Positions 1 to 42,724 of a stretch of DNA of 64,000 nucleotides are shown here, in pieces. Made by a program: the position numbers and the translations under genes. The notes beneath the pieces were generated by a model. That model saw only the letters and a program-made list of their open reading frames with translations, made no database searches and was not told the origin of the DNA. Location of the stretch: positions 215,340-279,339 of IMG/VR virus record IMGVR_UViG_3300044846_005229; one strand, given 5' to 3'. Positions within the stretch are counted from its first letter, which is position 1, and the number at the start of each line of letters is the position of its first letter.

Positions 1-513
1 GTTCCCTGCCAAGGTGGTCCCACGGCTATTTACCCTCGACTCCATCATTCCCACCTGAAAACTATCCCAAGTGAATGGCAATGGCGCAACATTCGTAGTT
101 TCCTTAGCAAATACCTTCTTCAAGGCCATAGCCCATTCTTCTGGGGTACGATTATCCTTGCAATTGTTGCATTCCAGGCAGCTAGTAACTAGGTTTTGCC
201 AAGTGTCTTGGCCACCTCTGGACTTTGGAATTACGTGGTCGATTGTAAGATTAGGACCTGAATACCCGCAATATTGGCAAACATGCCTATCTCGCTTCAG
301 GATCAAGGAACGGGAGGGTTTCCCGGCAAAGAGTTTAGATTGGGGGACTTTGACATAGTGCTTTAGGCGGATAGTACGCTTGGACACAACGTGTGCTTTA
401 TTTTTCAACACCAAAATAGTCGCCCTCTTCCAACTCAACATCGTCAAAGGTTGATATGTAGCATTGAGTAATAAAATAGTCGAACCAACTTTGACAGGGA
501 TTTCTTTAGGCAT
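1..513 (-). CDS. HNH endonuclease (McrA-like), 3' end runs off window
   Basis: Own translation (absent from ORF track): MPKEIPVKVGSTILLLNATYQPL...RDRHVCQYCG...TIDHVIPKSRGGQDTWQNLVTSCLECNNCKDNRTPEE; CxxC...DH...GG...N...CxxCN HNH signature. Confidence 0.9.
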   Translation of the reverse strand, partial: MPKEIPVKVGSTILLLNATYQPLTMLSWKRATILVLKNKAHVVSKRTIRLKHYVKVPQSKLFAGKPSRSLILKRDRHVCQYCGYSGPNLTIDHVIPKSRGGQDTWQNLVTSCLECNNCKDNRTPEEWAMALKKVFAKETTNVAPLPFTWDSFQVGMMESRVNSRGTTLAGN

Positions 514-1250: not shown

Positions 1251-2744
1251 TCAAGAGAGCAACCGACTCCTGATATTAGCCAGACTGTTTACATCTTCGC
1301 CATATACGCGACCGTCCAGGAAAACCGTTTTTAATTCCCCTAGTCCTTCCTGCTCATGGGTTTGCTGCTCATGGAGGACAAAGTCATCTCCTTCTTTTTC
1401 AACGCGGAGTAAACCCTTGGCCGATTTTTTCGTTCCAGAGTCAGTGATTGGATCCTTAAAAATTTCTACACCTTGACCATCAACTTGACCCCAAGTGGAT
1501 TTGAAAGCCATGCCAAAAGTATCGCGAGTGTGATATTGATAGGAATAAGATCCTACACCAAGAACAACGTTGCTGCTGGCCCACTTGTTACGGTTCATAT
1601 TTTCCAAGATAGAAAAAGCCCGTTGCAAGGTAATGGAATCACCGTAAATCAGACCAACCCTCGGATTAATTTCCCTGAAGCCACTTTCATTCACGGTGCC
1701 GCCAAACTCATCCCAAAGCAATTGCAGAGATCCCTTATGGGCAGGGCTGCCAGGTTCGGCATCAGGATTACCGCAAAGGATATGTTCGGGGTTACCGCTA
1801 TCACCCCTGAGTACAACCTTAGCAAGTCCCATAGCGTCCGGTTGACGGCTTAAGATAACATCCTTAAGTTGAACAGCAATTTTAGTCAAGACATTCCAGT
1901 AATCCCAAGTGTCACTAACAATACTGACGATACCACTGGGGTACCTGTCTTGAATAAGGCGCCGGTAAGTTTCCAACTCATTATCTTTACCGCCAATGCA
2001 CATTACACTGTGCTCAGTAGCAGGGACACCGCCCGCGATAAACTCAGAGCCAACATCATAGTAGTCTTCTAGGAAGTCGATCGAGGGGATATTGTCCGAA
2101 CCTGTAAACGAGAAAAGATGACCAATACCATGGGCAGCCCCATCATGAATTCCACCAACACCCCTCAACGAAAAGTCGTGCGCCTGGAAATTAACAAAGC
2201 TGGGGTCAGCTCCCGTCAATGCAGCATAACGATCTAGCAAACGACGAAACTCGTAAGCAACGGTAGCGATATTGACTGTTTTCCAAATTTCCGACGAAAG
2301 GGCAGTTTCCACGTAGTTAGTCAACCAGTAGAATTCGTGAATAGTATTCTGGATCGTCAAAAATGGTACTCTCAAATTGACTCGGCTTCCCTCAGGCAAA
2401 GCTTTAACCCTAAGGGGCATATAGCCGAGGTCATGTAAATCAGCCAGGTGATCTACTCCAACCGCCCCTGGGCCGAGGGCCGAATCCATACGCCTACGGT
2501 ACTTTTCAAGTACTTGATCCTTTGGTTTATTGAAAAAGGAGTCATTCCACAAGTCTTGAAGATACCATTTAAGAGTGCCTTGAATCCCTGCCACTACGAT
2601 TTTATGATCGAAATCCGGTAGCATCTTAGCCAGACGGTCAGATCTAGCGGTTTGATTGGTGTATACGATTTCGGTTTTGTCAGGGTATTGGTAGATATGC
2701 CCAGTCTTGTAAAAGTCGGTTGCGTGGGGGGCAAAAAGTTTCAT
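1251..2744 (-). CDS. nadV: nicotinamide phosphoribosyltransferase-family protein (NAMPT-like; probable Namat of NARP1)
   Basis: TDFYKTGH, HDFSLRG, PATEHSVM, SIVSDTWD, RGDSG, GLIYGDSIT, KDPITDSGTKKSAKG motifs; adjacent to Prs-like gene. Confidence 0.93.
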   Translation of the reverse strand: MKLFAPHATDFYKTGHIYQYPDKTEIVYTNQTARSDRLAKMLPDFDHKIVVAGIQGTLKWYLQDLWNDSFFNKPKDQVLEKYRRRMDSALGPGAVGVDHLADLHDLGYMPLRVKALPEGSRVNLRVPFLTIQNTIHEFYWLTNYVETALSSEIWKTVNIATVAYEFRRLLDRYAALTGADPSFVNFQAHDFSLRGVGGIHDGAAHGIGHLFSFTGSDNIPSIDFLEDYYDVGSEFIAGGVPATEHSVMCIGGKDNELETYRRLIQDRYPSGIVSIVSDTWDYWNVLTKIAVQLKDVILSRQPDAMGLAKVVLRGDSGNPEHILCGNPDAEPGSPAHKGSLQLLWDEFGGTVNESGFREINPRVGLIYGDSITLQRAFSILENMNRNKWASSNVVLGVGSYSYQYHTRDTFGMAFKSTWGQVDGQGVEIFKDPITDSGTKKSAKGLLRVEKEGDDFVLHEQQTHEQEGLGELKTVFLDGRVYGEDVNSLANIRSRLLS

Positions 2745-2809
2745 TGTTTGTTAGGGGTTTGGTTGCGTTTGGTTGCGTTTGGCGGTAGTTGCGTCCGGGT
2801 TAATAAGGC

Positions 2810-3730
2810 CTAGTTCACCCTGAGACAAGTCAAGTTGGCGGGTAGTTCCCGATAAAAGTCTCGATTCGGCAACATGTTCGCCACATAGAAGTGATCGATA
2901 AGGCCATCAAAAACCTCAAAACCCTTCGAGAAGATTCCATGGGTGATATACAAGTCGATGCGGGATGGCTCGTATTTTTTCAGAACCTTGGCAAGTTCAA
3001 TAAAGGTCCGACCACCATCGCAAATATCGTCAACAATAAGAAGGTTCTTCCCTTTGTAATCGCCGTCTTGGATCTCCGTTCGCAGGATTTCCCCATTTTC
3101 AGGGTTACGGACCTTAGTGGCATACTTGACTTCAGTAGACCCTCTAAATCTAGCAGCTACTTCCGCCCGTGGCACTGCGCCTTTATCAGGGGCAATGATT
3201 ACGGTGGTGGGGTCCCACTCCATGCCTGAAGGTATCAATTCAAACTTACTCAAAAGGGAATCAACCTGATCGTTAACAAAGTTGGTGAATTCCCCAAAGA
3301 TGCCCTCAGCTATAGGGCTATGAACATCCCACGTTGCCAAGAGGTCGCACTCGCCCAAATACGGCCTGAGGGAATTAGCAAACACCGACAGGGAGAAAGC
3401 TTCGCCTTCAGCACAAACTCTATCCTGGCGGCTATAGGGGAGATAGGGGATAAAAAGTTCCAACTTCCAAGGCTTGGGGAGCCCATCCCTCACTCTTTTA
3501 ATCGCATCCAAAATAAGCAAAAGTTTCACCCATTCTTCGCCTTTGCCGTCGATGTCAGCAGTGACGAAGATTTCGGAGTATTCAGACAGACTATCAAGGT
3601 TAACTCCGTCTAAGATTCTAACTTGATGCTCTCCAGCCGAGAAAGTGAAGGTTGAGTAATTGATCTCTGTAGGAGGTTTCCCCTCGATTAGATCCCTCGT
3701 TAGATTGGTTGCAGTTATGTTGATTGTCAT
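2810..3730 (-). CDS. prs: ribose-phosphate pyrophosphokinase-family protein (probable Adps of NARP1)
   Basis: FSAGE, PYLPYSRQDR, DVHS, APDKGA, IVDDICDGGRTF (PRPP loop), THGIFS. Confidence 0.92.
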   Translation of the reverse strand: MTINITATNLTRDLIEGKPPTEINYSTFTFSAGEHQVRILDGVNLDSLSEYSEIFVTADIDGKGEEWVKLLLILDAIKRVRDGLPKPWKLELFIPYLPYSRQDRVCAEGEAFSLSVFANSLRPYLGECDLLATWDVHSPIAEGIFGEFTNFVNDQVDSLLSKFELIPSGMEWDPTTVIIAPDKGAVPRAEVAARFRGSTEVKYATKVRNPENGEILRTEIQDGDYKGKNLLIVDDICDGGRTFIELAKVLKKYEPSRIDLYITHGIFSKGFEVFDGLIDHFYVANMLPNRDFYRELPANLTCLRVN

Positions 3731-3881: not shown

Positions 3882-3909
3882 AAAAGAAAGAGGGGGTGAG
3901 GCACCCCCC
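3882..3909 (-). terminator. intrinsic terminator after SLH-porin gene
   Basis: minus strand GGGGG-loop-CCCCC hairpin followed by TTTCTTTT. Confidence 0.6.
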
Positions 3910-3917: not shown

Positions 3918-4766
3918 TCAGAACTTAAAGCCGAGACCGATAGTGCCGACGGGGGCGTAAGCCGTTCCAGCAACACCGTTTTCCTGAGTCGGGAACTTCA
4001 GATCAGCGAAACCAACCAGGGACGATGTAAAAGCACGCTCCACACCGGCAACGAATACAAACTGAGAACCTTGACCAATGCTGGTCTGGTAGTTGGCTTC
4101 CCCATCGTTCGTCAATGCCCATTGGCCACCGGCACCGAGGTAGAGGTTAGTGCCACTAACGAAAGTACCACCGATGGTACGCCCAGCCAGGGAAACGTCT
4201 ACGGTCCCCAGAACACCGATAGCAGAACCAATTTGGCTATCAGGGCCCGCAGCGAAGTTCACATAGGGACGAGCTGAGATGGCAGTACCGTAGACTTCAG
4301 CCACTGGGAAACGTCCCTGAAGGGTACCACCAGCGATAGTACGATTGTTGCTATAGGTGTCGCTGCTAACGCCTTGGCGATTCAGGTTAACGCCTACGCC
4401 AACATAATTACCAACTCCAACTGCTTTCCGAGTTGCCGTATCTTCAAGGGCAGAAATACGAGCGTTGGTAACTGCGATAGCCGCACGAGCCTCGTCTGCA
4501 ATGCGACGATCTGCTTGGCTCAGTGTGTCATAAACCCGGTCAACGCAAGCACTCATGAGAGCTACGCTTTCGTAGCGGGTGGTGGGATTGCTACCACGGA
4601 AAGTGCCATCGGGATAACCAGCAACGCAACCATACTTTTCAGCTAGGTTTTGAAGGGCACCGTAGGCCCAATTTGTAGGAGAAGAGTCCGTAAACCGTGG
4701 TGCGGCGAACGCAGGGGTGGTAAAGGAAGCGATAGCTGCTAATGTAGCAATAATTCGATTTTTCAT
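3918..4766 (-). CDS. SLH-domain outer-membrane porin-like protein
   Basis: signal peptide (PAFA), SLH motif FTD..PTNWAYGAL..L.EKYGCVAGYPDGTFRG...TRYE, amphipathic beta-strands, C-terminal GLGFKF. Confidence 0.85.
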   Translation of the reverse strand: MKNRIIATLAAIASFTTPAFAAPRFTDSSPTNWAYGALQNLAEKYGCVAGYPDGTFRGSNPTTRYESVALMSACVDRVYDTLSQADRRIADEARAAIAVTNARISALEDTATRKAVGVGNYVGVGVNLNRQGVSSDTYSNNRTIAGGTLQGRFPVAEVYGTAISARPYVNFAAGPDSQIGSAIGVLGTVDVSLAGRTIGGTFVSGTNLYLGAGGQWALTNDGEANYQTSIGQGSQFVFVAGVERAFTSSLVGFADLKFPTQENGVAGTAYAPVGTIGLGFKF

Positions 4767-4789
4767 TTTCATTTTGTTTGTGTTTTGTC

Positions 4790-4905
4790 TGTACAGATCC
4801 GGGTTACAAATCCCGGAATGTGATTGTGGGGTTATGAACCCCGGTGCAAATAGCACTTTGCCCTCTCAGGGTTACAATCACCTTGCTATTGGGTCGTTTA
4901 TTGGG
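4790..4905 (-). promoter_or_regulatory. structured 5' leader of SLH-porin gene (possible pseudoknot)
   Basis: crossing pairings AATAGCA/TGCTATT and GTGATTGT/ACAATCAC plus three local hairpins. Confidence 0.4.
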
Positions 4906-6220: not shown

Positions 6221-6568
6221 TCAGAGACGAGAAATGCAAACGTTGGCTAAACCACTGACCCCCAGGCGTTGAGCAGCTCCGTGAGCAAGGTCAATGATAC
6301 GACCTCCGATGTAGGGTCCCCTATCTGAAATCCTAACATCAGCAACAAGGCCATTGTCACGATTTACTACTCTGACCCAACTTCCAAAGGGGAGTGAAGG
6401 ATGTGCTGCTGTCATTGTGTTAGGGCGCAATCTTTCACCACTAGCAGTTAAGTTTCCATATAATCCTGGCCCATACCAACTGGCTTGGCCACACTGCTTG
6501 GCTTGAGCTGGTTCCCCAGAAAGAAGTCCGGCAGCGAGAAGGAAAGAGGATAATTTGGAAAAACGCAT
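6221..6568 (-). CDS. rlpA: RlpA-like lytic transglycosylase (DPBB)
   Basis: GQASWYG...TASGE...TAAHPSLPFGS.VRV.N...DRGPY..GRIIDL; start reassigned to MRFSK. Confidence 0.92.
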   Translation of the reverse strand: MRFSKLSSFLLAAGLLSGEPAQAKQCGQASWYGPGLYGNLTASGERLRPNTMTAAHPSLPFGSWVRVVNRDNGLVADVRISDRGPYIGGRIIDLAHGAAQRLGVSGLANVCISRL

Positions 6569-6696
6569 GAAAACATTAGGATCCAACATTATTCTAGGTT
6601 TTTGCGGTTGGCAACCACGGCCTGGTGCCTGATTACTCGGGCTAGATACCATTGTAGCTTGTTGCGGTGAGCAAGTAAAGTTCGGGAAACCGCCCA

Positions 6697-7374
6697 TCAG
6701 CTTGCCTCTTGGCGAAGATTTGCTAGGTTTTCTTCATAGAAGCGCCGCAGGTCCTCATACCTTTTAACCGGCTGACCGTAATAGCTGTTGCCGCCATAAG
6801 TCGGAAGAGATGCCCATTCCGGAGCAAGCTTTGCAATTAGCGTAGGAGTAATCTTCCCGGAATCAGCTAGGCTCAAGGCATTGCGCTTTTCGACAAGGTA
6901 CAAGGCTGCTTGGTCTTGGCTTCCGGGGCCAAAGTCCGAAAGGTTAAGTTTCTTGGATGCTTCATCCCAGGTCCCTGGCAAGAACTGATAGGCCCCAGCA
7001 GCTGCACTCGCGTAGCTCACCGAGTATTGAATTTGGTTTGGATGTTTTTCTAATGAGGATACCATGCGCCCCCCAAACAAAATCCGGTAGCCATCTCGGC
7101 TATTTTCAGTCCAGGTTCCTTCGGCAAAGCGAATGGTATTTAAAAGGGCTCTGCGTTCTGGCGTAAGCTCATAGGCAGGGGCCGGTAAAAACTTTGTAGG
7201 ATCGCAGCCTGTGCAGATGGGGTCGAGTCCTAGTGGTAGACCTGGGGAGAGACCCATGATTGCGACTTTCTGAGGTATAGGGTATTCCAGTCTGTTAAAC
7301 TCAGTAAGTCCGTTTAGCGGGGTTGCAACAGTTCCAACCAGGGAAACAGCCACAAGTGTAGTGAGGTTAAGCAT
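6697..7374 (-). CDS. lambda-type lysozyme/muramidase (GH104-like) with N-terminal signal region
   Basis: RALLNTIRFAEGT, Y.ILFGG, SAAAGAYQFL..TW, DFGPGSQD, EWASLP. Confidence 0.88.
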   Translation of the reverse strand: MLNLTTLVAVSLVGTVATPLNGLTEFNRLEYPIPQKVAIMGLSPGLPLGLDPICTGCDPTKFLPAPAYELTPERRALLNTIRFAEGTWTENSRDGYRILFGGRMVSSLEKHPNQIQYSVSYASAAAGAYQFLPGTWDEASKKLNLSDFGPGSQDQAALYLVEKRNALSLADSGKITPTLIAKLAPEWASLPTYGGNSYYGQPVKRYEDLRRFYEENLANLRQEAS

Positions 7375-25402: not shown

Positions 25403-26625
25403 GTTTGTTTTAGGGGTTACAAGGTTTGTCAGAAAAGGTTTAATGCCATCGCCTGGGCCCAATACAGGATCAGGGTCTAAAGGGCAATTATGACGTTGAG
25501 TTTATTACCAGTGGGGACATCAAAATAAATTTCAAAGTCCGGGGAGTGTTTAGTTGCCATTTCCCCAAAGCTCTTCATAAGTTTGCTTGATGGTGTCTTC
25601 CTTATTAAGTGGGTGATTGTCACTCCATTCGCCAATTTCTTTTGATTGAATAGACATTATCTTTGGGTAGAGGTGCCTTATGTTTTCAATGAAATACACA
25701 ATATCATCTTCAGGCATGTCCTCAAAACCCAATACTAAAACTTCAACTTTGTATGCTTTCATTGTCCCCCGGTTGCTTCGAAACACCCCTGATCGTAACC
25801 TTCGTCGTACATTTCTTGGGCAAATTTTAGAAGTCCATGGAGGAGCTTAGATTTTACGACGAATGACGATGGTTCAATTCTTACTAGGTCACCCATGCCA
25901 TCTATAGCTGACCCCTTTCTGATAAAGTTGAAGTGTTGACTAGCAATCTCAAAAATTTGTTCGTCAGTCATTATCGAAATAGTGTAGGTTGGTTTGGGGG
26001 GGGGGGGGGGGGGTTCCCCATGTAGCTATGGTACTCTAATCGATGGGCCAGGTAAAGGCCGGTTAACCGCCCTACCCGTCAAACTCTGAAAGTTCTTTCT
26101 TAGCGGCTTCCTTCCCAAGCAATCTCCTTTCTTTTTTATGCAAGACCTTTCCATGAGAACAAAGTTTGCATCGTGGGTTTCCGCAATCGAGTGGGTCTTT
26201 GCTATAGACCTTGCCAAAAGTGATGCAATCAGGGTTAATGCCGTTATTCAAACTACCTAGCAATCTTAACCATTTATTCCTCAAACGTTCCGCATGGTGG
26301 CGTCTTCGGGCTGACTTTGCCATTTTGGTTCTAGGGCCCTGGACAATTGATTAAACTACTGGGGCTATGGACGAAGAGGACCAGCTCGTCCTGATCCAAG
26401 TAACCAGCCACCAATAAGACTAAAAAAATGTGCCAAAAAAATGTGTCAGGGAAAGGTCCTGGAATTGCGAAGCCAATGGAGACTAAAAGGGTTGCGACAG
26501 TGAGTAGAATGTAAGGGTTAGGCATTGGGTTTTGTAGAGGGGTGATCCGATGCCATTATAGGGCAAGTTTTCCCTGGGGAAACGGTCGGTTTTCCGAACC
26601 CATGGTTAAAACTCCGAAGCCAAAA

Positions 26626-26707
26626 TACCGAATGTCGGACTCGAACCGACACGCCTTGCGGCAATCGCTTTTGAGGCGGCCATGACTACCAATTCCATCA
26701 ATTCGGC
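26626..26707 (-). tRNA. trnL: tRNA-Leu(CAA)
   Basis: cloverleaf with long variable arm, loop CT-CAA-AA, GTTCGAGTC T-loop. Confidence 0.88.
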
Positions 26708-26835
26708 ATTTGCCCTGAGTAGCCAGCTCAAGGACTTTTTGGATGTTTGAACCGTCGCTCATTTCACCCTCCATTTTGATATGGGAGATGGGCTCCTTTA
26801 AGGAGTTAACTCCCGAGCAAGTTACTGATTGCTCA

Positions 26836-26949
26836 CCGATAGAATTTTGCTAACCTAAGTTAACAATGCACAGGTATTAATACCTGAGGGGCTATCTCCC
26901 AAAGTCTCAAGAATTCTTGAGACGCTTTTTACCCAGATATTCCGGGCAC
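26836..26949. repeat. 114-bp exact repeat, copy 1
   Basis: identical to 42372-42485. Confidence 0.95.
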
Positions 26950-26986
26950 ACCGTCTCTTTTTGGCTGGCCCAGAGAAGACGGGCTA

Positions 26987-27067
26987 TGGGGGCAGGGGGA
27001 CTCGAACCCCCACGGCCGAAGCCAGAAGTTTTTAAGACTTCCGTGTCTACCATTCCACCATGCTCCC
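26987..27067 (-). tRNA. trnL: tRNA-Leu(TAA)
   Basis: GAAGT-CT-TAA-AA-ACTTC, long variable arm. Confidence 0.92.
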
Positions 27068-27424
27068 TTGTGTGCCCCATCATAGCACCCCTTGGGTAAA
27101 AGTCGGGGCCTTTGGGGTTAGTTCGTGGCTAAATCCGAAGATGAACTAAACCCAAAGCAAACCCCTAGCCAATCAACCAATACTCAAGTAAGCCCTAGCC
27201 TCTACAATTTCCAAGCCATCCCCACCAAAGGTAAACGAAGTTTGGACTCCCCTGTGATTTGAAAATGGGCTAGAGATTGTCACCGTTAGGGAATTAGGGT
27301 TATCTAACTCCCCATAGGAAACTCTGCCCAGGGTCAACCAGTTAGATTGGAATCTATTGATGATAGACTCTTTTGAAAGTCGTGGGTATTGGAATTGCAT
27401 TTGTTTGCTAAGGCTGCCCCTAAA

Positions 27425-27868
27425 TCAGGCAGTGAGTACACATGGGGTAGATTTACCCAACTTGCTGAAATTGGCTGTTGTCACTAGTTTTACTGATTGA
27501 CTGCCGGACATCTTGGCATCCGATTGAGCACCAGCCAGCAATTTCATTTGCTTGAGGGTAGCCAGCATTTCGGTAGCTTCCTTGGCGCCATCACGGTTGG
27601 CGATAGCAAGTTTGGAATGGTTTTTGCGGGCAGAGCCATAATCACTCCCATATTGCGCCCACCAAGCATCTTGCTGCTCGATGTCCCAATCATAGGAAAA
27701 CACAGGCACATCAGAGACGGCGTGTTGGTTGGTGCGGATTTGATTTTTGCGGTTGCGTTGGCCCTGGCTGAGTTGGCTGTAGGCTTGTTTCCAGTCGGCA
27801 ATGGCTTGAAGGTAGGTTTCCTTAGTAGTGAAGGCGGTGAAGGTGGTGAATGCGGCTAGAGTTGTCAT
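27425..27868 (-). CDS. hypothetical protein
   Basis: 147 aa ORF behind promoter-like sequence. Confidence 0.7.
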   Translation of the reverse strand: MTTLAAFTTFTAFTTKETYLQAIADWKQAYSQLSQGQRNRKNQIRTNQHAVSDVPVFSYDWDIEQQDAWWAQYGSDYGSARKNHSKLAIANRDGAKEATEMLATLKQMKLLAGAQSDAKMSGSQSVKLVTTANFSKLGKSTPCVLTA

Positions 27869-27963
27869 TGTTTTTGTTGTGTGTGTGTGTTTCGGTGTGG
27901 GCTATCGACCGAGTTAGTGTAAGATGGGCCCGTGGTCGGGGCAATACGGTAAACCGACCAGGT

Positions 27964-28518
27964 TCATTTAGGGTGGGTGTCTGCTGATCTAAAACCCACT
28001 TGAGTGGGCCTGCTGTTCGGACCCTTGAACGGCACATTAACTCTGTGATCCACTATCGTTACCGGTGAATCTAAACTCAAAGTGTTACCCCCCAGATTAA
28101 TTCTTTTCACTTGGACATACTCTGCAACTTTTTGCAGATCTTCAAGTACCGCGCCACCGTTGGCCACGACCATGTCAGCAACTGCCATCAGGCTCCGGTA
28201 CTGCTTATCGTCAAACTTTAAGCCGTTGGCTTCTTTGAGAATACACAGAATAACTTTTTCTGGCCTTTTATTACTATCATCTACTACCTCAGCAATAGAG
28301 TAAAACCCTTTTATTTCAGGCGTAATGACATAGAGGCAAAAATCGCAATTTTTTCTTTGCTCAATTTCCTCAAGCCGTGCCCTGTCTGTCCATTCTTCGA
28401 CTACGGGGTTAAAATATCCCAGCAGCCGCTGCTCCAGTAGGATTATAAGTTCTTCGCGCCAAGTGGATCCATTACAAGTGCCCCCAAGGAACACTTTTGT
28501 TTGATTGTCTGAAGTCAT
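27964..28518 (-). CDS. nucleoside 2-deoxyribosyltransferase-like protein
   Basis: KVFLGGTCNGSTWRE, YFNPVVEEW, LYVITP..KGFYSIAEVVDDSNKRP. Confidence 0.8.
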   Translation of the reverse strand: MTSDNQTKVFLGGTCNGSTWREELIILLEQRLLGYFNPVVEEWTDRARLEEIEQRKNCDFCLYVITPEIKGFYSIAEVVDDSNKRPEKVILCILKEANGLKFDDKQYRSLMAVADMVVANGGAVLEDLQKVAEYVQVKRINLGGNTLSLDSPVTIVDHRVNVPFKGPNSRPTQVGFRSADTHPK

Positions 28519-28627
28519 TTTGCTGGTGTTTGTATGTTGGTGAACTTGCTGTTAAAGCTGTGTTTGTTACGAGCCTATTGTAGCTTAAAGGGGGAGCTGA
28601 GTCAAGGGGGAGGCCAAACCCCGACCA

Positions 28628-29860
28628 TCACTCAATCCAATGGGGGACCACTCGGCTTGTGTCAAGGACAATCGGCCGGTCATGATCCCTAATGATGATG
28701 CCTGCGGGTTCATTACCGACAACCCAAGACCCGATGACTGCCCGATTGTCGCCGTCCTGGAAAAGATCGGCTTTTTTCTGGTAGATGCGGGGTCCATCAT
28801 ACATGCCAGTAGTTCTAGAGGTTACCACACCTGACTCAACAATGTCAATGTTGGCCCCTTCCCGGCTCAGCATAGGCTTTACCACGTAGGATGTGGGATT
28901 TAGTTTTCCGGATGAAAACGCCTCTAATTGTTCTGGTGTTCCATGCTCCCGGAGATTCAGCCAATCCCAATCATCCACCGGGATGCCACCCTCAGTGAAA
29001 CTGGCTGGAAGGATGTTAGGGTGGTCTGGAAACATCTCATGGAGAATAGGCAAGATGCCCTTATTGCTCAGGATTGATTTCCAGATTGGCTCTACAATTC
29101 CAGAGGAACCTTTAATAGTGTGTAATCCAAACTCATCTCCCATCATCCATTCCCATGGGTATAGCTTGAACCAATACTTAATCGGATTCTCTTGGATGTC
29201 AGTGAAGTTTTCTCCATTCCAGCCAATGTCCCCCAAATCAATAAAATCTGTAGTTAACCCAGCCTGAGTAGCTAAATCTTGGAAGTAAACCAGGGTCTGA
29301 TACTCCTCTAGGCTTTCAGAATAACCTGCAAATACAAACTTGTGGCCGAACGGTACCCTTTGCCTGATTTCCTTGAATTGGTCAATAAGTTTTTCATGCA
29401 AAGAGTTGAATTGGTCTTTTCCGGGCTTAACATCCTGCAACCAGAACCATTGCATTAGCGCCGATTCAATAACCATTGTAGGAGTGTCTGCATTGTATTC
29501 CAACATCTTAGGTTGGCTGTCCCCCGTATATGCAAAGTCAAACCTGCCATATAAAGATGGGTCGCATTGCTTCCAGGATTTGGAAATCGCGGAGTGGTAT
29601 GCTGAGGGAATTCCGATTTTTGCCATTAACTCTGAATCACCCACAACCTTGTCCACAGCATCGAGGCACCGGAGTTGGCATTCCCGTGTGGCATCTTCAA
29701 GTTCGTCAATTTCAGCCATAGAAAACTCATAGGCCACAGATTCATCCCAATAGGTTCCCTCCCCATCTTTTGATGAGGTACCCGATGTGTGGTAGGTGAA
29801 CCCAATCTCTTCAGCTTTTTCTTGCCAATTAACGCGAGGTTGTAGGGTGTGACGTTTCAT
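28628..29860 (-). CDS. glutathionylspermidine synthase-family ATP-grasp ligase (YgiC-like)
   Basis: YWDES, LYGRFDFAY, KMLEYNADTPT, DQFNSLHE, FKLYPWEW, EPIWKSILSNK, KPMLSREGAN, IGSWVV. Confidence 0.93.
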   Translation of the reverse strand: MKRHTLQPRVNWQEKAEEIGFTYHTSGTSSKDGEGTYWDESVAYEFSMAEIDELEDATRECQLRCLDAVDKVVGDSELMAKIGIPSAYHSAISKSWKQCDPSLYGRFDFAYTGDSQPKMLEYNADTPTMVIESALMQWFWLQDVKPGKDQFNSLHEKLIDQFKEIRQRVPFGHKFVFAGYSESLEEYQTLVYFQDLATQAGLTTDFIDLGDIGWNGENFTDIQENPIKYWFKLYPWEWMMGDEFGLHTIKGSSGIVEPIWKSILSNKGILPILHEMFPDHPNILPASFTEGGIPVDDWDWLNLREHGTPEQLEAFSSGKLNPTSYVVKPMLSREGANIDIVESGVVTSRTTGMYDGPRIYQKKADLFQDGDNRAVIGSWVVGNEPAGIIIRDHDRPIVLDTSRVVPHWIE

Positions 29861-29944
29861 TTTGCTGTTTGGGTTGGCGGGTTGGTGCCCGGTATGATAA
29901 TTTGGGAGTCTACCCAGCCACTATAGCACAGCTTAACCCTGCAA

Positions 29945-30709
29945 TCAACTCCCACTGCCAAACCCTCGACCGCCCCCACCGAATCCGCTCCGGGCAGATG
30001 CTGACCGAGACGACGTAAACGATGAGCGTCCATAACCTCCCACAGAGCCCCTAATCGATGCACTACGGGCAGATGGCACATAGTTGCTGCTTAAGGCCAA
30101 AGATCGCCCACTAGATGGGTTGGCGCGAATGTAGGAGGTTCGCATTCCTTCCGTCAGGGAATTGGATCTGATTCCGGAGAACCCATACGAGTAATAATAA
30201 GGAGTCGGATACCAACCGCCAAGAACAACAACTGAGGTTCGATCATAATCGTCGTCCTGATTATCAAAGACCGATGGCCCCGCAACTACGGCTCGCTCCT
30301 TAAGCTCATCAGCAGTAAGGGGCCGCTCGTTGATATAGCCTTCTTCATCTTCGTATTCTGCTGTTTTTTGATCGTAGCCTTGGAGATATACAGGGCGACT
30401 ATTCGCCATGAAACCAACCATTTTAGGCAACCAAACTGTGGCACCGTCTAAAGTTACTTCGGAACATTCCTGATGACCTGCCGTCTTGCAATTAGCAGTG
30501 CTGGGGTAGCGAGGTGCCTTGAGCAGGTGGCTAAATGCTGCCCGATCATAATGCTGCTTGCAATCTTTGGTTCCAAACTTTTCACATTCTTCTATAGTTG
30601 AAAAAATCTTCTGACCTTCCAAGCTGGGTTGGGGTTTGGAGCAAGCTGTCAATGTGATGGCCGTCATGGATGCAATGAGGACCAAAGAGATGGATTGTGT
30701 GTGTTTCAT
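29945..30709 (-). CDS. DUF1190/YgiB-like lipoprotein
   Basis: lipobox LTAC, Cys pattern, APRY, W.PKMVGF, C-terminal RSGFGGGG; upstream of GSP synthase. Confidence 0.8.
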   Translation of the reverse strand: MKHTQSISLVLIASMTAITLTACSKPQPSLEGQKIFSTIEECEKFGTKDCKQHYDRAAFSHLLKAPRYPSTANCKTAGHQECSEVTLDGATVWLPKMVGFMANSRPVYLQGYDQKTAEYEDEEGYINERPLTADELKERAVVAGPSVFDNQDDDYDRTSVVVLGGWYPTPYYYSYGFSGIRSNSLTEGMRTSYIRANPSSGRSLALSSNYVPSARSASIRGSVGGYGRSSFTSSRSASARSGFGGGGRGFGSGS

Positions 30710-32279
30710 TGGTGGTGTTTGGACTTTGTATGTATGGTAAGGCCTATAGGGGGTTTAGAAACCCATTGAAGTTAGGCGCTAAACCAGCAAGTACCACCAT
30801 GGCGAAACTCAGCTTGAATCTGCTTGTAGGTGCAGCGTTTATTGTCCGCAGGACTAACCCTTGACAACCCTTCAGGAAGCTCCGTATACTCGGAGAGAAG
30901 TTTGACTTCAATGTCTTTGGTACTAATGTCAGGAATCATCTTGGTTTTAATGTCAGGAATTGCTTTTTGGACAAGCTTTTTTTAAAGCCATGATGGCGGA
31001 AAGGGTGTTTCGAACTTCAGTCGGGGTTCTGCACCACCCTAAAGCATTGGAAACTTGTTTGCGGCTGGAGCATAACTCTTCGGCCCAAAATCTAAACAGT
31101 TCGGCATCTTTGTCATCGTTGGGGGCATCCATATTTAGTCTTTGTGTCCTGAATCTGCATTCCGCTCAAAACCCGAAGCAATAGATCTGATATAACTTTG
31201 AGTCTTCTCAGTCACACCAAAATTACAGATGTTTGGAGGGGCACCTGCCGCCCAGCGTGCAATCAGTTCGTCTTCCAATTCCGGGGTGTGGCGTGAGCGG
31301 GTACGCAAGTACCAAACATCATGAGCACAATTCACGGAAACACCAAGTTCGGTTGCTAGGTCTCTCATGTATTGCTCCAACTCCTCGTAGTATTCGTTGA
31401 GAATGTCCTCGTCAAATACGGTGGAAGCTTCGTTGGAGATTTGCTCAGGTGTCATTTTGCGGTTGGGTGATGATTGGTTAGCTGAAGGTATCGTATTGGT
31501 TTTGGCCTAAAGGGTCAAGGTTCGGGAACCCCGCCTTCAACATTGTTTGGCGTACTTTCCTTCGGTATGAACTTTGGTTTTGATTCCAGAATAGACGGGC
31601 ATATAGATTTGTCCACCGATGAAACCCAATCTAAAATAGTTCCTAACTAGAAAATTTTCAAAGTTTGTTTCTGTTAGGGACGTAACTTGGTGCATTGTTT
31701 CCAAGGTGCTGCATTGGGTTTGAAGCCGTGTGTTTTGGCACCGGAGTTCCTGGTTAAGGTCGTCCCAATTCAAAAGATAAGGTTTCGTGTGCTTCATGAC
31801 TGATTGCCACGGGAGATTCTCGCAAGGATTGCCTTACCGATTTATTGCCAAATAGTTAAGGGTTTCGGTGGCTAGGGTACCCATTGGTTTTGGGCTTTGC
31901 AGTTCCAGTCAAAATTTTGATAAGGGGGGAGGTTAACTTCTATGCAATAGGCCCCGCAAAGGTTGCAAAACCTCCATTTATCTTGTAATTCTCGGGAGCT
32001 AAAGTCACCAGGGGTGCTGTGGCCGCATGTAGAGCAGTTTTTGATTGGGAGTTCGCTCATTGTTCTTAGTGTGGGGAATCGAATGCGGGACTTTGATTGG
32101 CCCTGATGGTCTGTGGCGGGGTAAATTCTTAGCGCCTTAACTTAGCTACTATAGGTTGTTTTCTCCGGGGTTACCAGGGCGGTTATCCCTACTAAAAGGG
32201 ACGGTAATTACACCATCGGAAGGGGGGAGCACCCTGCCGCATGGGGGACGAACCCTGTGCATCATCACCGATAAGGCAA

Positions 32280-32738
32280 TCAAAGCCCTAGAAGTTTACG
32301 ATCTTCGGGGTCGAGTTTTGAAAGGGCAGCTTGTCGTTTACGGTGGTTTTCTTCTACTTCAAGACGAGAGCGTCTAATGTACTCAATCACTGAGAAGGCA
32401 TTATCGATTTCGTATACTAAATTACAGTAGTCAGAGTAAGAGTAGCTATCTTGATACAACGCAAGATTAAGGCTGTTACCTGAGAGGCTGAAGTTTGAAT
32501 TATGGATGGTAAGTTTGAATATATTGGGTTCCGGTTGTTTTAGGGTATAATCAATGACCTCTTTATCTAGTTCTGAGAGCAAATTAAGGATAATACCAGG
32601 AAAAGCATGGAAGTAGGAATCCATTTCCTTCTTTTGAATCTGAGCAGCGGCGGCCTTTAATTCAGCTTCTTTTTCCAGACGTTGCTGCTTGCGGAGAGCT
32701 TTTTCTTCGTCGGATAGTGGTTGCTTGGGGCTTGGCAT
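32280..32738 (-). CDS. hypothetical protein (ALSKLDPEDRKLLGL-tail family)
   Basis: shares C-terminal motif with 33322 and 33742 ORFs. Confidence 0.75.
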   Translation of the reverse strand: MPSPKQPLSDEEKALRKQQRLEKEAELKAAAAQIQKKEMDSYFHAFPGIILNLLSELDKEVIDYTLKQPEPNIFKLTIHNSNFSLSGNSLNLALYQDSYSYSDYCNLVYEIDNAFSVIEYIRRSRLEVEENHRKRQAALSKLDPEDRKLLGL

Positions 32739-32764
32739 AGTCTGCTTAGGGTTTGGGGTCGGGG

Positions 32765-32859
32765 GTGTTGGTGCTATTATAGGTCGTTTACTTTCGGGTG
32801 TGGGTGCGGATTCCCGTACAAAAAGGTTCGGTAATTACACCATCGGGAGCCGAAGTCAA
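32765..32859. repeat. intergenic promoter-cassette repeat, copy 2
   Basis: runs from stop codon of upstream gene to TATAAT box. Confidence 0.92.
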
Positions 32860-33209
32860 AACCCTGGTAGGCCACATTCCTTAAGCCAACCATCATACCA
32901 AATCTGAGCCGAACCACGGATCACTTCGTCAACCATGTCCGTCAGGATCCACTCTTGGCTTGAATGAAATGGTGCGCTTCTTAGATGCACATACCGGTGA
33001 CCTGCCCAGTAGTCTAGAAACGTCCGGTCTTCGTTCGGGAAGATATCAAAAAGTAGCTGACTCATGAGCGGACGCTTATCGATGCCTCGACTCATTTTGT
33101 CAAGCGTAACTTTGACGGCCGCTAGTTGGTCTTTGGTAAGGGTGTTTTTCGGGATTGCATCAAGGTTGACTTTTCCGGTAGGGGTCGTTGCTAGTGGATG
33201 ATAAGGCAT
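32856..33209 (-). CDS. hypothetical protein flanked by direct repeats
   Basis: 117 aa ORF between repeat copies 2 and 3. Confidence 0.75.
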   Translation of the reverse strand: MPYHPLATTPTGKVNLDAIPKNTLTKDQLAAVKVTLDKMSRGIDKRPLMSQLLFDIFPNEDRTFLDYWAGHRYVHLRSAPFHSSQEWILTDMVDEVIRGSAQIWYDGWLKECGLPGF

Positions 33210-33230
33210 TGGCTCGGGGGTATGACGGGA

Positions 33231-33325
33231 GTGTTGGTACTATTATAGGTCGTTTACTTTCGGGTGTGGGTGTGGATTCCCGTACTTTTAGGTTCGGTAA
33301 TTACGCCATCGGGAGCCGAAGTCAA
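33231..33325. repeat. intergenic promoter-cassette repeat, copy 3
   Basis: near-identical to 32765-32859. Confidence 0.92.
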
Positions 33326-33690
33326 CGAATCCCAAGTGCGTCCCTTTGCTCAGGAGTCAACGCTTCCTTTGCTACCCTCCTTGCTTCCGCCTTAACTTTT
33401 TCCGCTTCCTTTTGTTTTCGGTGGCTTTCACGCCGCTTCTCATATTCCTCGTCGGTCTCCTCTCTAATTTTGTAATACTTAGTTTCACACATTGCGTACT
33501 CATGGCCGTAGTCGTTATCGATCCACTTTTCGCTATCTATGTGGGTGAAACCCTCGTTTAAGATATCTTGAAGATACGCAATAACTGCTGAAATTTCCCT
33601 ACTGAAAACATCAGTGGCATTATCCGTGTATTGCTCTTTTTTAGACTGCATTTTGTAGTCAGTTACAGTTAGCCTTTTGAGTTTTGCCAT
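33322..33690 (-). CDS. hypothetical protein, paralog of 33742-34101
   Basis: EGFTHID...REETDEEY...LTPEQRDALGI. Confidence 0.8.
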   Translation of the reverse strand: MAKLKRLTVTDYKMQSKKEQYTDNATDVFSREISAVIAYLQDILNEGFTHIDSEKWIDNDYGHEYAMCETKYYKIREETDEEYEKRRESHRKQKEAEKVKAEARRVAKEALTPEQRDALGIR

Positions 33691-33741
33691 TTTGCCTTTG
33701 TTTTTGTTTTCAAAAGAACTTTAAAGGAATGCCATAACAGA

Positions 33742-34101
33742 TTATTGACTAATACCCAAAGCCTCTCTTTGCTCCTGAGATAGTCCCGCAATAGTCACCC
33801 TCCGTCTTTCCGCTTTTTCTTCCCTTTCTAATTCAACTTTCAGTCGTGCCTGATACTCTGCGTCAGTTTCCTCTCTTTCTTTGAAATAGGAAAGATAAGC
33901 TGTACCGAGTCCATCCCATCCAGAGATGTCTACGTCTAAGGTCGTAAAACCTTCATCTATGAGAGACTCGATATAGTCCGCAAGTTCCCTTAGGTTTCTA
34001 GGGAGGTACCTCAAGTCATCTTCAAGTTTTTCTTGTCTGTGGATGTTGTGGGTGAATAACCCTAACTTGTATTCTTTAATTAGTTTCTTTGTTTTTTCCA
34101 T
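33742..34101 (-). CDS. hypothetical protein, paralog of 33322-33690
   Basis: EGFTTLD...REETDAEY...LSQEQREALGI. Confidence 0.8.
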   Translation of the reverse strand: MEKTKKLIKEYKLGLFTHNIHRQEKLEDDLRYLPRNLRELADYIESLIDEGFTTLDVDISGWDGLGTAYLSYFKEREETDAEYQARLKVELEREEKAERRRVTIAGLSQEQREALGISQ

Positions 34102-34319
34102 TTTGGTTTAGTGATTTGTTGTGTAGGGAGCCTATCCCTTTGTGTCCCAACCAGTGTAAAGCACCCTGTACATGACTTAATGGGAACCTAGTGGCATGCA
34201 ACTTTAAGCAACCAAATGGAATGGACGATGCCAAACACAAATGCCACGCCAATTAGTCCACTGACCCAACCAACTCTGCGCCCATGTTCGTGAATTTTGG
34301 TGTCCGCTGGGGTTGGCAA

Positions 34320-34574
34320 TTAGCATCTCATGATGGGACCATTTTGTGGGGGCCTTTGAGCAGGGTTTGTTGGCGGGACAGGCACTGAAGACCCTGAGTG
34401 AATCTCATTCAAGGCACCCTGAGCCTCAGGACCCCCAAAGCTCGGGTCAATCTCATGGTAGAAAACCATGTTGAGGTGGTTGCGGATAACTTGGATTTGG
34501 TCCGGAGTAAGAGATTCAGGGTTCCCAAGTTCAAAGAGCCCTTGTAGCCAATAGCAAAAGTTGCGGGATGTCAT
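34320..34574 (-). CDS. FCxWLQG-family small protein
   Basis: MTSRNFCYWLQGLFE...GPIMRC*. Confidence 0.8.
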   Translation of the reverse strand: MTSRNFCYWLQGLFELGNPESLTPDQIQVIRNHLNMVFYHEIDPSFGGPEAQGALNEIHSGSSVPVPPTNPAQRPPQNGPIMRC

Positions 34575-34590
34575 TTTGGTTGCGGGAAGG

Positions 34591-34683
34591 TTAATGGTTG
34601 GTGTAGCAGTTGAGACCAAGGGATTTAGGGTCATCAAGTTCAAAGAGTCTTTGAAGCCAGTAGCAAAAGTTATGGGATGTCAT
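34591..34683 (-). CDS. truncated FCxWLQG-family mini-ORF
   Basis: own translation MTSHNFCYWLQRLFELDDPKSLGLNCYTNH*; nucleotide duplicate of the start of 34320-34574. Confidence 0.6.
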   Translation of the reverse strand: MTSHNFCYWLQRLFELDDPKSLGLNCYTNH

Positions 34684-35069
34684 TTTGGTTTTGGTGGTTG
34701 ACGGCCACCAAGGGATTCAACTTGCCCTGACATACCTGTGGGCCCCAGTGAGCTGCTCCCTCTAACGACCCTCCATGTGGTTGTACCATCGGGTTGTCGC
34801 TGCTCGATCTGAATGGCTTGATCTGGGTCAAACCCGTGCTTGGCTATGAATGCTTGAAGAACCTCTTCGCGCTGAGATAGGATTGGGTTTACTATGTTTT
34901 GTAAACTGTTGTGAAACTCTTGTAGTTCCTTATTGTCTGGGCTCTTCCTCGGTACCCCATACGACCCGGCCACGGCGGCGATGACTTCAGCTTGGTCTGA
35001 GTTGAGTTCAATTCCTGTTATACTGAGGATGTAGCCTTGCAGCCAGTGGCAAAAGTCGCGTGATTGCAT
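34680..35069 (-). CDS. FCxWLQG-family protein
   Basis: MQSRDFCHWLQGYIL. Confidence 0.75.
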   Translation of the reverse strand: MQSRDFCHWLQGYILSITGIELNSDQAEVIAAVAGSYGVPRKSPDNKELQEFHNSLQNIVNPILSQREEVLQAFIAKHGFDPDQAIQIEQRQPDGTTTWRVVRGSSSLGPTGMSGQVESLGGRQPPKPK

Positions 35070-35120
35070 TGTCGTGTTTAGATTGAGTGTGAATTTCAAT
35101 AGGATTATATTCGGGTCCAG

Positions 35121-35312
35121 TCAGCAGCGGGCGATCTCGCCGTTCGGGAATGTCGGTTGGTGCCACCCTGGTTTAGTTGGCTCTGGGCCTTGAACCAAGT
35201 GGACTTTTTCAAGATTGTTGCGGACCCTGTCAATTTGGTCTTGGTTAAGTTCGGTTCCAGTAACGCCTAGGATGTAGCCTTGAAGCCATGTTACAAAGTC
35301 AGTTTTGTTCAT
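35121..35312 (-). CDS. FCxWLQG-family small protein
   Basis: MNKTDFVTWLQGYIL...GEIARC*. Confidence 0.75.
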   Translation of the reverse strand: MNKTDFVTWLQGYILGVTGTELNQDQIDRVRNNLEKVHLVQGPEPTKPGWHQPTFPNGEIARC

Positions 35313-35332
35313 TTTGTGAGTGGGGAGTGAAA

Positions 35333-36271: not shown

Positions 36272-36336
36272 TTTGAAGTTGTTTTGGTTTTAGTATTGGT
36301 TTTAGTTGAAGGTAATAGATGATGGTCGCAGGGCAA

Positions 36337-38763: not shown

Positions 38764-38773
38764 AAGCGTTTCC

Positions 38774-42723: not shown

Positions 42724-42724
42724 A

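What the first reader, a model, noticed from the sequence alone, without database searches (positions are those of the whole stretch)
1251..3730. NARP1-type NAD+ reconstitution pair in a cyanophage
Seen: co-oriented adjacent Prs-like and NAMPT-like genes. Established: this two-gene layout defines phage NARP1 (Adps makes ADPR-PP from ADPR; Namat joins it to nicotinamide), which counters NAD+-depleting defences such as Thoeris, DSR and SIR2-HerA. Inference: this is NARP1 rather than ordinary PRPP/NMN salvage, since no NMN adenylyltransferase is visible in the window.
Basis: partly seen in the sequence, partly recalled or inferred. Interest (0 to 1): 0.6.

Follow-up and report, generated by a model that had tools for sequence, protein, structure and literature searches.

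The report
NARP1 NAD+-rebuilding gene pair, cyanophage
An uncultured 279-kb lake phage related to cyanophages carries the known two-gene NARP1 module (Adps plus Namat), which rebuilds NAD+ from the fragments left by NAD+-destroying bacterial defences; it is an ordinary new member of a known system in a host group where it had not been recorded.

Summary

The NARP1 reading is supported by sequence, not by assay.
- **Namat gene.** Its best solved-structure match is SpβL1 Namat (9W5X/9W5W, 456 bits, against about 205 bits for mammalian Nampt). It carries the published Namat adenine-clamp motif (GSYSYQYHTRD) and the clamp-loop Arg. It sits in a well-supported clade with Adps-linked phage Namats, apart from the NMNAT-linked Nampts of KVP40, RB43, RSP15 and Synechococcus phage B3.
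- **Adps gene.** It falls in the Adps-like clade, apart from canonical Prs. It has the family's PP loop (DDICDGGRTF) and catalytic Lys206, and it lacks the Prs C-terminal helices.
- **No second route.** The complete 279-kb genome has no NMNAT and no Nudix gene.

The closest cultured relative by terminase (54%) and portal (59%) is Synechococcus phage S-CBWM1, so "cyanophage" is a reasonable inference. The host is not proven.

No enzyme activity was tested. The gene family is deep, with only 30-45% identity between this Adps and any characterised or bacterial homologue.

Verdict: a new member of a known kind, of modest interest.

The parts
2810..3730 (-). adps-like gene (P0002, 306 aa): predicted ADP-ribose diphosphokinase, ADPR + ATP -> ADPR-PP + AMP
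   Evidence: It scores 114 bits on TIGR01251, in the range of Prs-like paralogues (98-159 bits) and far below canonical Prs (400-428 bits). It scores 196.5 bits on a profile of phage Adps against 59.8 bits on a canonical Prs profile. The tree places it inside the 63-row Adps-like clade (SH-aLRT 99, branch length 2.76), away from Prs. Aligned to ICP1 Adps it keeps F30, R101, H137, D182, K206 (=K185) and the PP loop D234-D235-I-C-D-G-G-R-T-F243, and it lacks the Prs C-terminal alpha11-alpha12 helices.
1251..2744 (-). namat-like gene (P0001, 497 aa): predicted nicotinamide ADP-ribose transferase, ADPR-PP + nicotinamide -> NAD+ + PPi
   Evidence: Its best PDB match is SpβL1 Namat 9W5X/9W5W (E 1e-135, 456 bits), against about 205 bits for mammalian Nampt. 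The clamp-helix motif G398-S-Y-S-Y-Q-Y-H-T-R-D408 fits the published GSXΦXΦXΦTRD pattern, and R37 aligns with the clamp-loop R40. The catalytic core is kept: D10, Y12, F191, R194, D217, H245, R313 and D315. It lies in the 19-row Namat clade (SH-aLRT 99), apart from NMNAT-linked Nampt (100). It scores 615 bits on a phage Namat profile against 251 bits on a NARP2 Nampt profile.
2745..2809 (-). 65-nt spacer between adps and namat, holding a short direct repeat (AAACGCAACC twice); no terminator-like hairpin was predicted in it
   Evidence: Co-transcription of the two genes is inferred, not shown.
3891..3909 (-). Terminator-like GC-rich hairpin with a T tract, just after the upstream SLH gene; it probably marks the 5' boundary of the adps-namat unit
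   Evidence: This is a consensus scan only.

Best explanation
The two genes form a NARP1 module. When a host defence (a TIR, SIR2 or SEFIR NADase) cleaves NAD+ into ADP-ribose and nicotinamide, the Prs-like enzyme (Adps) moves the beta,gamma-diphosphate of ATP onto the terminal ribose of ADPR to give ADPR-PP. The Nampt-like enzyme (Namat) then joins ADPR-PP to nicotinamide, which regenerates NAD+ in two steps without passing through NMN. What is shown here: gene presence, order and family membership, the specificity-linked motifs, and the absence of any NMNAT or Nudix gene in the complete genome. What is inferred: the substrates, co-transcription of the pair, the counter-defence role, and a cyanobacterial host.
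For: 1) Namat. The top solved-structure match is the characterised SpβL1 Namat (PDB codes confirmed). Lan et al. 2026 tie ADPR-PP selectivity to a clamp-helix motif and a clamp-loop Arg, and both are present. All 9 Adps-linked phage homologues and the large majority of the roughly 100 Adps-linked homologues examined carry GS[YF]x[YF]; the 4 NMNAT-linked Nampts carry GG[GA]LLQ.
2) Adps. The protein sits in the Adps-like clade with the biochemically verified ICP1 Adps. It shares the PP loop, the catalytic Lys and the C-terminal truncation that Liu et al. 2026 describe as family signatures.
3) Osterman et al. report that 97% of Adps-clade genes have Namat next to them and that no phage carries both NARP1 and NARP2. 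Here the pair is adjacent, and no NMNAT or Nudix gene was found in the 100%-complete genome.
4) Bacterial homologues of the pair lie beside NrtR, a repressor released by ADPR. This fits ADPR being the pathway's input.
5) In two metatranscriptome runs, contigs of a 90-96% identical relative cover both genes but not the adjacent SLH gene, although a DNA run from the same sample as one of them covers that gene.
6) Defence-type SIR2_2 proteins occur in 14 of 81 sampled cyanobacterial-phylum genomes.
Against: - Nothing was assayed.
- The Adps is only 30.5% identical to ICP1 Adps and 36-45% identical to any phage or bacterial homologue. It forms its own deep lineage whose position inside the clade is unresolved.
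- ICP1 Phe92, an adenine contact, is Cys106 here. That position varies across the family.
- Namat enzymes also turn PRPP into NMN in vitro, so an NMN side-route completed by a host NMNAT is not excluded.
- Namat reads R-G-D where all 13 reference sequences read R-P-D at the catalytic Arg/Asp motif.
- The RNA evidence comes from assembled contigs, which show neither strand nor expression level.
Confidence: 0.82

Rival explanations
1. Classical salvage boosted by the phage. The Prs-like enzyme makes PRPP from ribose-5-phosphate, the Nampt-like enzyme makes NMN from PRPP and nicotinamide, and a host NMNAT (NadD or NadM) completes NAD+. This would be an auxiliary metabolic pair, not an ADPR-recycling one.
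For: Both proteins belong to the Prs and Nampt superfamilies and keep the shared catalytic residues. Namat enzymes retain about half of human Nampt's PRPP-to-NMN activity in vitro. Bacterial prs-nadV operons were long read this way (Rodionov 2008). A host NMNAT cannot be ruled out.
Against: P0002 scores far below every Prs equivalog cut-off (for example 48 against 518, and 105 against 296) and groups apart from canonical Prs. P0001 carries the adenine clamp that is needed only for ADPR-PP use. It groups apart from the NMNAT-linked Nampts, including KVP40 Nampt, the protein Osterman et al. tested with PRPP and ADPR-PP. Osterman et al. link phage Nampt functionally to a phage NMNAT (NARP2), and this genome has none.
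Confidence: 0.1
2. A NARP1-like pair with a shifted substrate. This deep-branching Adps lineage might pyrophosphorylate a different ADPR derivative, such as 2'-phospho-ADPR (to rebuild NADP+) or a Thoeris-type signal breakdown product.
For: The Adps lineage is separate from all reference sequences, has a roughly 20-aa N-terminal extension, and has Cys in place of the ICP1 adenine-contact Phe92. The genome also holds a weak macro-domain ORF.
Against: No positive evidence exists. The PP loop, the catalytic Lys and the Namat adenine clamp are all typical of the family, and position 92 varies among accepted Adps homologues.
Confidence: 0.05
3. The genes are decayed or inactive remnants with no role in the phage.
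For: The P-to-G change in the catalytic RPD motif of Namat.
Against: Both ORFs are intact and full length. All catalytic residues are kept. Close and distant relatives conserve the pair (Adps 62-93% identity, Namat 69%). Contigs covering both genes occur in RNA libraries.
Confidence: 0.03

Closest known systems
NARP1 of Bacillus phage SpβL1, Escherichia phage Bas63 and Vibrio phage ICP1 (Adps + Namat; Osterman et al. 2024; Lan et al. 2026; Liu et al. 2026)
   Same: The gene content and order are the same, with adps upstream of namat. Namat matches SpβL1 Namat at E 1e-135 and carries the same clamp-helix motif and clamp-loop Arg. Adps shares the PP loop, the catalytic Lys and the missing C-terminal helices with ICP1 Adps. 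No NMNAT is present in the genome.
   Different: The Adps is highly diverged (30.5% identity to ICP1) and forms its own lineage with IMG/VR lake viruses. Namat reads RGD instead of RPD at the catalytic Arg/Asp motif, and the third polar position (Φ3) of the clamp-helix motif is His rather than the usual Asn or Val. The carrier is an uncultured 279-kb freshwater phage related to Synechococcus phage S-CBWM1, a host group with no NARP1 entry in the held part of Osterman's tables.
NARP2 (Nampt + NMNAT-Nudix) of Vibrio phage KVP40 and Synechococcus phages B3/B23
   Same: It has the same overall aim of rebuilding NAD+ during infection, and its Nampt is a homologue of Namat. B3 shares a 48%-identical helicase with this phage.
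   Different: P0001 is only 26-29% identical to these Nampts and lies in the other clade. The clamp motif differs (GG[GA]LLQ). NARP2 needs a phage NMNAT, which is absent here, and has no Adps.
Bacterial nrtR-prs-nadV operons (Shewanella, Acinetobacter and others; Rodionov et al. 2008), now read as chromosomal NARP1 (Lan et al. 2026)
   Same: These operons hold the closest Namat sequences (up to 59-60% identity), and the window's Namat nests among them in the tree. They share the gene order, the Namat-type clamp motif and the Adps-like Prs paralogue.
   Different: The bacterial loci add the ADPR-sensing repressor NrtR and sit in genomes that also have a canonical Prs. The phage has no NrtR or Nudix gene.
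Canonical class I ribose-phosphate diphosphokinase (E. coli, B. subtilis and human PRPS)
   Same: The fold family and the shared catalytic residues are the same: the RQDR motif, His, the flexible-loop Lys, and the DD motif.
   Different: Identity to E. coli Prs is 26%. The PP loop reads DDICDGGRTF rather than DDMIDTGGTL. The C-terminal alpha11-alpha12 regulatory and filament module is missing. The TIGR01251 score is 114 bits against more than 400 bits for true Prs.

Membership tests
NARP1 (system) | An adps gene and a namat gene in immediate vicinity (97% of Adps-clade genes have Namat adjacent; Osterman et al.) | tested here: met
   The genes are 65 nt apart, on the same strand, with adps upstream. 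Four IMG/VR relatives share this arrangement.
NARP1 (system) | The phage does not also encode the NARP2 partner NMNAT (no phage was found with both) | tested here: met
   PF01467 and PF00293 are absent from the complete 279-kb genome, and positive controls matched in 14 of 14 genomes. tblastn with three NMNAT or Nudix proteins found nothing below E 0.1.
Namat | [quoted passage not shown] 2026) | tested here: met
   Residues 398-408 read GSYSYQYHTRD, with Y400 and Y404 aromatic. Φ3 is His rather than the usual Asn or Val.
Namat | Clamp loop (SCL) with Arg, Lys or Tyr as the stacking residue (SpβL1 R40) | tested here: met
   R37 aligns with R40 in the HMMER alignment to 9W5X. The loop is 4 residues longer than in SpβL1.
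Namat | Nampt-like catalytic core (SpβL1 D13, Y15, F189, R192, D215, catalytic His, R306, D308) | tested here: met
   D10, Y12, F191, R194, D217, H245, R313 and D315 are present. The residue between R313 and D315 is Gly, not Pro.
Namat | Falls in the Adps-associated clade, distinct from the NMNAT-associated Nampt clade (Osterman Fig. 4A) | tested here: met
   In a 26-row maximum-likelihood tree the protein lies in a 19-row clade with all Adps-linked phage Namats (SH-aLRT 99), separated from KVP40, RB43, RSP15 and B3 (100). Profile scores are 615 bits against 251 bits.
Namat | Makes NAD+ from ADPR-PP + nicotinamide, with a preference over PRPP | not testable with these tools
   This needs purified enzyme and LC-MS.
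Adps | Falls in the clade separate from prokaryotic Prs (Osterman Fig. 3C) | tested here: met
   In a 69-row tree, 63 Adps-like rows including P0002 and ICP1 Adps are split from 5 canonical Prs by a branch of length 2.76 (SH-aLRT 99). The quick search gave long-branch warnings, and the position inside the clade is unresolved. Profile scores are 196.5 bits against 59.8 bits.
Adps | Remodelled PP loop conserved across Adps homologues (ICP1 C215-S220) and the catalytic beta-hairpin Lys (ICP1 K185 = SpβL1 K162) | tested here: met
   The loop reads D234 D235 I C D G G R T F243, against DDMIDTGGTL in E. coli Prs, and K206 aligns with K185. The two Ala residues of ICP1 are Gly and Arg here, as in several other homologues.
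Adps | Loss of the C-terminal alpha11-alpha12 module of PRPS (called a defining signature by Liu et al.) | tested here: met
   The alignment ends about 22 residues before the E. coli Prs C-terminus, and nothing corresponds to the SGMLAEAIRRISNEE... segment.
Adps | ADPR adenine contacts F18, R87 and F92 of ICP1 Adps | tested here: inconclusive
   F30 and R101 are kept. F92 is C106 here, but this column also varies (C, E, M, V) among accepted Adps homologues, and F18 and R87 are conserved in Prs too, so these positions do not discriminate.
Adps | Converts ADPR + ATP to ADPR-PP + AMP | not testable with these tools
   This needs purified enzyme and LC-MS.
Canonical Prs (considered and rejected) | Reaches the NCBIfam equivalog cut-offs for ribose-phosphate diphosphokinase | tested here: not met
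   The best equivalog score is 104.7 bits against a cut-off of 296, and others are 48-61 bits against 438-536. Only the broad subfamily model TIGR01251 is just reached (114.2 against 113).
Cyanophage (host claim) | Structural and replication genes closest to phages of cyanobacteria; host-like genes present | tested here: met
   TerL is 54% and portal 59% identical to Synechococcus phage S-CBWM1, with S-TIM5-type cyanophages next. The helicase is 48% identical to Synechococcus phages B3/B23. The SLH protein matches only 6 Synechococcus phage records and the cyanobacterial SomB porin N-terminus. The DNA comes from lake water. No psbA was found, and no host was shown directly.

The most novel reading that the evidence does not exclude
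This deep-branching Adps/Namat lineage could be a cyanophage-specific variant whose Adps accepts an ADPR derivative other than plain ADPR, for example 2'-phospho-ADPR, so that the pair would rebuild NADP+, the main photosynthetic redox carrier, as well as NAD+. A more modest version is that this is the first NARP1 lineage recorded in cyanophages. That would imply that NAD+-depleting defences shape freshwater picocyanobacteria-phage dynamics.
Probability: 0.06. Interest if true: 0.65.

Novelty: new member of a known kind. Interest (0 to 1): 0.3.

Why it matters
NARP1 is a characterised broad-spectrum counter-defence found in about 4% of sequenced phages. Cyanophages recorded so far in the published tables carry the alternative NARP2 route: Synechococcus phages B3 and B23 are listed as Nmnat-associated.

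A NARP1 pair in a widespread lake phage related to Synechococcus phages suggests that NAD+-depleting immunity also matters in freshwater cyanobacteria. Defence-type SIR2 proteins were seen in 14 of 81 sampled cyanobacterial genomes. The find also gives a diverged Adps/Namat pair for comparative enzymology.

It does not change how the pathway is understood.

Tried and rejected
- **Bacterial third gene misread as NMNAT.** From a GenBank annotation and tblastn hits, I first took the third gene in the bacterial Adps-Namat loci for an NMNAT-Nudix enzyme. That would have undercut the split between NARP1 and NMN salvage. Pfam showed it is NrtR (NUDIX plus an NrtR winged helix, with no cytidylyltransferase domain), matching Rodionov 2008, so I dropped the idea.
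- **Host-derived Prs or NadV gene.** Rejected. Only 4 of 81 sampled cyanobacterial-phylum genomes have any Nampt/Namat homologue, and two of those carry a Nampt-type motif. P0002 is far from the cyanobacterial canonical Prs (L101) in the tree.
- **T4-like cyanomyovirus.** A Gp23 Pfam search found nothing, but the control matched nowhere either, so this says nothing.
- **psbA.** Not found.
- **PDB entry 9KE8.** This was the second-best structural match (380 bits, motif GAQTYQRNTRD). No held paper describes it, so I could not use it.
- **Terminal repeat.** The terminal-repeat label is IMG/VR's.
- **Steps not run.** I did not run structure prediction, complex prediction or the large HMMER search. 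The sequence evidence was already decisive, a fold would not separate ADPR-PP use from PRPP use, and no Adps structure matched in the PDB copy searched.
Full report
**Observation**

The interval 1251-3730 holds exactly two minus-strand ORFs.
- P0002 (2810-3730, 306 aa) matches ribose-phosphate diphosphokinase models: TIGR01251 at 114 bits and PHROG 619 at 218 bits.
- P0001 (1251-2744, 497 aa) matches nicotinamide phosphoribosyltransferase models: NF006629 at 516 bits and PHROG 448 at 597 bits.

On the coding strand the Prs-like gene comes first, followed by a 65-nt spacer. A terminator-like hairpin at 3909-3891 follows the upstream SLH-domain gene, and no hairpin was predicted inside the spacer.

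The window is the last 64 kb of a 279,339-bp IMG/VR virus record, classed as complete with terminal repeats. All large ORFs in the window lie on one strand, and it holds 17 tRNA genes. Each of the two genes is single-copy in the genome.

**What defines NARP1**

Osterman et al. (bioRxiv 10.1101/2024.02.11.579819) report four points.
- Adps forms a clade apart from Prs.
- 97% of Adps genes have Namat next to them.
- Adps-linked Namats form a clade apart from NMNAT-linked Nampts (NARP2, for example KVP40).
- No phage carries both pathways.

Lan et al. (PMC12774641) solved SpβL1 Namat (9W5X/9W5W). They tie ADPR-PP selectivity to a clamp with two parts. [quoted passage not shown] The other is a loop residue, usually Arg, Lys or Tyr. 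Clamp mutants lose NAD+ synthesis from ADPR-PP but keep PRPP-to-NMN activity.

Liu et al. (PMC13586617) solved ICP1 Adps. They name three family features: a remodelled PP loop, the catalytic Lys185, and loss of the C-terminal alpha11-alpha12 module.

**Namat test**

- The best solved-structure matches of P0001 are 9W5X/9W5W (E 1e-135, 456 bits). Mammalian Nampt scores about 205 bits.
- Residues 398-408 read GSYSYQYHTRD, and R37 aligns with the clamp-loop R40.
- The catalytic core is present: D10, Y12, F191, R194, D217, H245, R313 and D315.
- In an alignment with nine Adps-linked phage homologues and four NMNAT-linked Nampts, the two groups differ at several motifs, and P0001 follows the first group at each one.

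| Motif region | Adps-linked group | NMNAT-linked group |
|---|---|---|
| Clamp helix | GS[YF]x[YF] | GG[GA]LLQ |
| Motif 2 | HDFS | HDFG |
| Motif 3 | EHSV | EHST |
| Motif 4 | IYGDS | IQGDG |

- A maximum-likelihood tree puts P0001 inside a 19-row clade with all the Adps-linked phage Namats (SH-aLRT 99). The KVP40, RB43, RSP15 and B3 clade is separate (100).
- Home-made profiles give 615 bits for Namat against 251 bits for Nampt.
- One deviation stands out. The catalytic motif reads R-G-D, where all 13 reference sequences read R-P-D.

**Adps test**

- P0002 is 26% identical to E. coli Prs and 30.5% identical to ICP1 Adps.
- It keeps F30, R101, H137, D182 and K206 (=K185).
- It shares the PP loop DDICDGGRTF with Adps homologues; Prs has DDMIDTGGTL.
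- It ends before the Prs C-terminal helices.
- In four of five bacteria that carry such a pair, the canonical Prs scores 400-428 bits on TIGR01251. Their second, operon-linked paralogue scores 98-159 bits. P0002 scores 114 bits.
- In a 69-row tree, a branch of length 2.76 (SH-aLRT 99) separates 63 Adps-like rows from five canonical Prs rows. The 63 rows include ICP1, phage K and P0002 with its four IMG/VR relatives.
- P0002's lineage is deep, and its position inside that clade is unresolved. The tree was a quick search and gave long-branch warnings.
- Profiles give 196.5 bits for phage Adps against 59.8 bits for Prs.

**No second route in the genome**

The whole genome has no cytidylyltransferase-type NMNAT and no Nudix gene by Pfam search, and the positive controls matched. 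tblastn with three NMNAT or Nudix proteins found nothing. Synechococcus phage B3, by contrast, has a true NMNAT-Nudix gene next to its Nampt.

**Bacterial relatives, and a trap avoided**

A scan of 185,579 species genomes gave at least 579 Adps-like hits. In 79 of the best 80 loci a Namat-type gene follows. Most of these loci also hold a third gene, which GenBank calls "bifunctional NMNAT/ADPR pyrophosphatase".

Pfam shows that this third gene is NrtR, a NUDIX domain plus an NrtR winged helix. Rodionov et al. 2008 showed that NrtR represses prs-nadV and is released by ADP-ribose. They also found the committed Prs paralogue puzzling (PMC2330246). This fits ADPR being the pathway's input. Lan et al. 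discuss bacterial NARP1 but do not mention NrtR.

The window's Namat nests among these bacterial sequences.

**Host and habitat**

- Terminase (54%) and portal (59%) are closest to Synechococcus phage S-CBWM1, with S-TIM5-type cyanophages next.
- The UvrD helicase is closest to Synechococcus phages B3/B23.
- The SLH protein beside the pair matches only Synechococcus phage records and the N-terminus of the cyanobacterial SomB porin.
- The DNA recurs in lake-water metagenomes from many studies.
- S-CBWM1 and B3 have no Adps homologue detectable with this query.
- The held parts of Osterman's tables list Synechococcus phages only as Nmnat-associated.
- No held paper mentions both "cyanophage" and "NARP1".
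- In a sample of 81 cyanobacterial-phylum genomes, Namat/Nampt homologues occur in 4 and defence-type SIR2_2 proteins in 14.

**Expression hint**

In two freshwater-sediment metatranscriptome runs, assembled contigs of a 90-96% identical relative cover both genes. They leave the adjacent SLH gene uncovered, although the DNA run from the same sample as one of them (X23) covers it. Contigs show neither strand nor expression level, so this is only a hint.

**Verdict**

Everything rests on sequence and context; no activity was measured. The main rival, PRPP/NMN salvage completed by a host NMNAT, remains possible at about 0.1, because Namat enzymes keep that side activity. This is a new member of a known system in a little-sampled host group, and its interest is modest.

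Noticed in passing
L002:5945-6886 (also L003), inside the Namat ORF L002:4988-7435; equivalent site in the window is about 1800-1808 (R313-G-D315): Two close IMG/VR relatives (Adps 93% identical) carry a 314-aa in-frame insert exactly between the D and S of the catalytic RPD|SG motif of Namat. The insert starts with Cys, ends with Gly-Asn, and is followed by Ser. It weakly matches an NrdHF intein (6zgq, E 0.0012) and has no Pfam hit. It is probably an intein with a homing endonuclease. The window's allele has no insert and reads RGD at that site.
   Followed up: partly
L021-L100 (bacterial genome loci); L006:4049-4816: Bacterial Adps-like and Namat-like pairs are nearly always next to NrtR, the ADP-ribose-released repressor of prs-nadV (Rodionov 2008). 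The GenBank label 'bifunctional NMNAT/ADPR pyrophosphatase' is wrong by domain content. The link between NrtR and bacterial NARP1 is not mentioned in Lan et al. 2026.
   Followed up: partly
G000:C1:196355-196954 (minus strand; L020:1390-1989), about 19 kb before the window: A 199-aa ORF gives a weak Macro-domain match (20.7 bits, just under the 22-bit cut-off). Pseudomonas phage Adele also has a macro-domain gene beside its NARP1 pair. It may process ADPR derivatives.
   Followed up: no
window 3918-4856 (-): An SLH-domain protein lies directly upstream of the pair. It is 46-49% identical to the 'S-layer/iron uptake porin' proteins of Synechococcus phages S-PM2 and S-CREM1, and its N-terminus matches the cyanobacterial SomB porin model.
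   Followed up: partly
window 1-513 (-): An HNH endonuclease ORF (171 aa, running off the window's start) lies downstream of Namat. HNH genes also sit beside or inside Namat in several reference phages.
   Followed up: no
window 26625-45852 (-): A cluster of 17 tRNA genes, all on the minus strand, including two tRNA-Leu(TAA) and two tRNA-Thr.
   Followed up: no
window 28628-29860 (-); 58101-60449 (-); 6221-6697 (-): A glutathionylspermidine-synthase-family protein (430 bits), a 782-aa collagen-repeat protein, and a DPBB/RlpA-like lytic transglycosylase.
   Followed up: no
G000:C1:55274-56692 and 56748-58478 (L123, L124): Two adjacent ORFs both match large-terminase families (96 and 275 bits on PHROG 38). 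This could be a duplicated or split terminase.
   Followed up: no
L117, L118 (cyanobacterial genomes G081, G021): Two cyanobacterial Nampt homologues form an intermediate clade with a shorter, non-aromatic motif (GVGGILRN[YH]SRD). L118 nevertheless has a Prs-like gene upstream that groups in the Adps-like clade.
   Followed up: no
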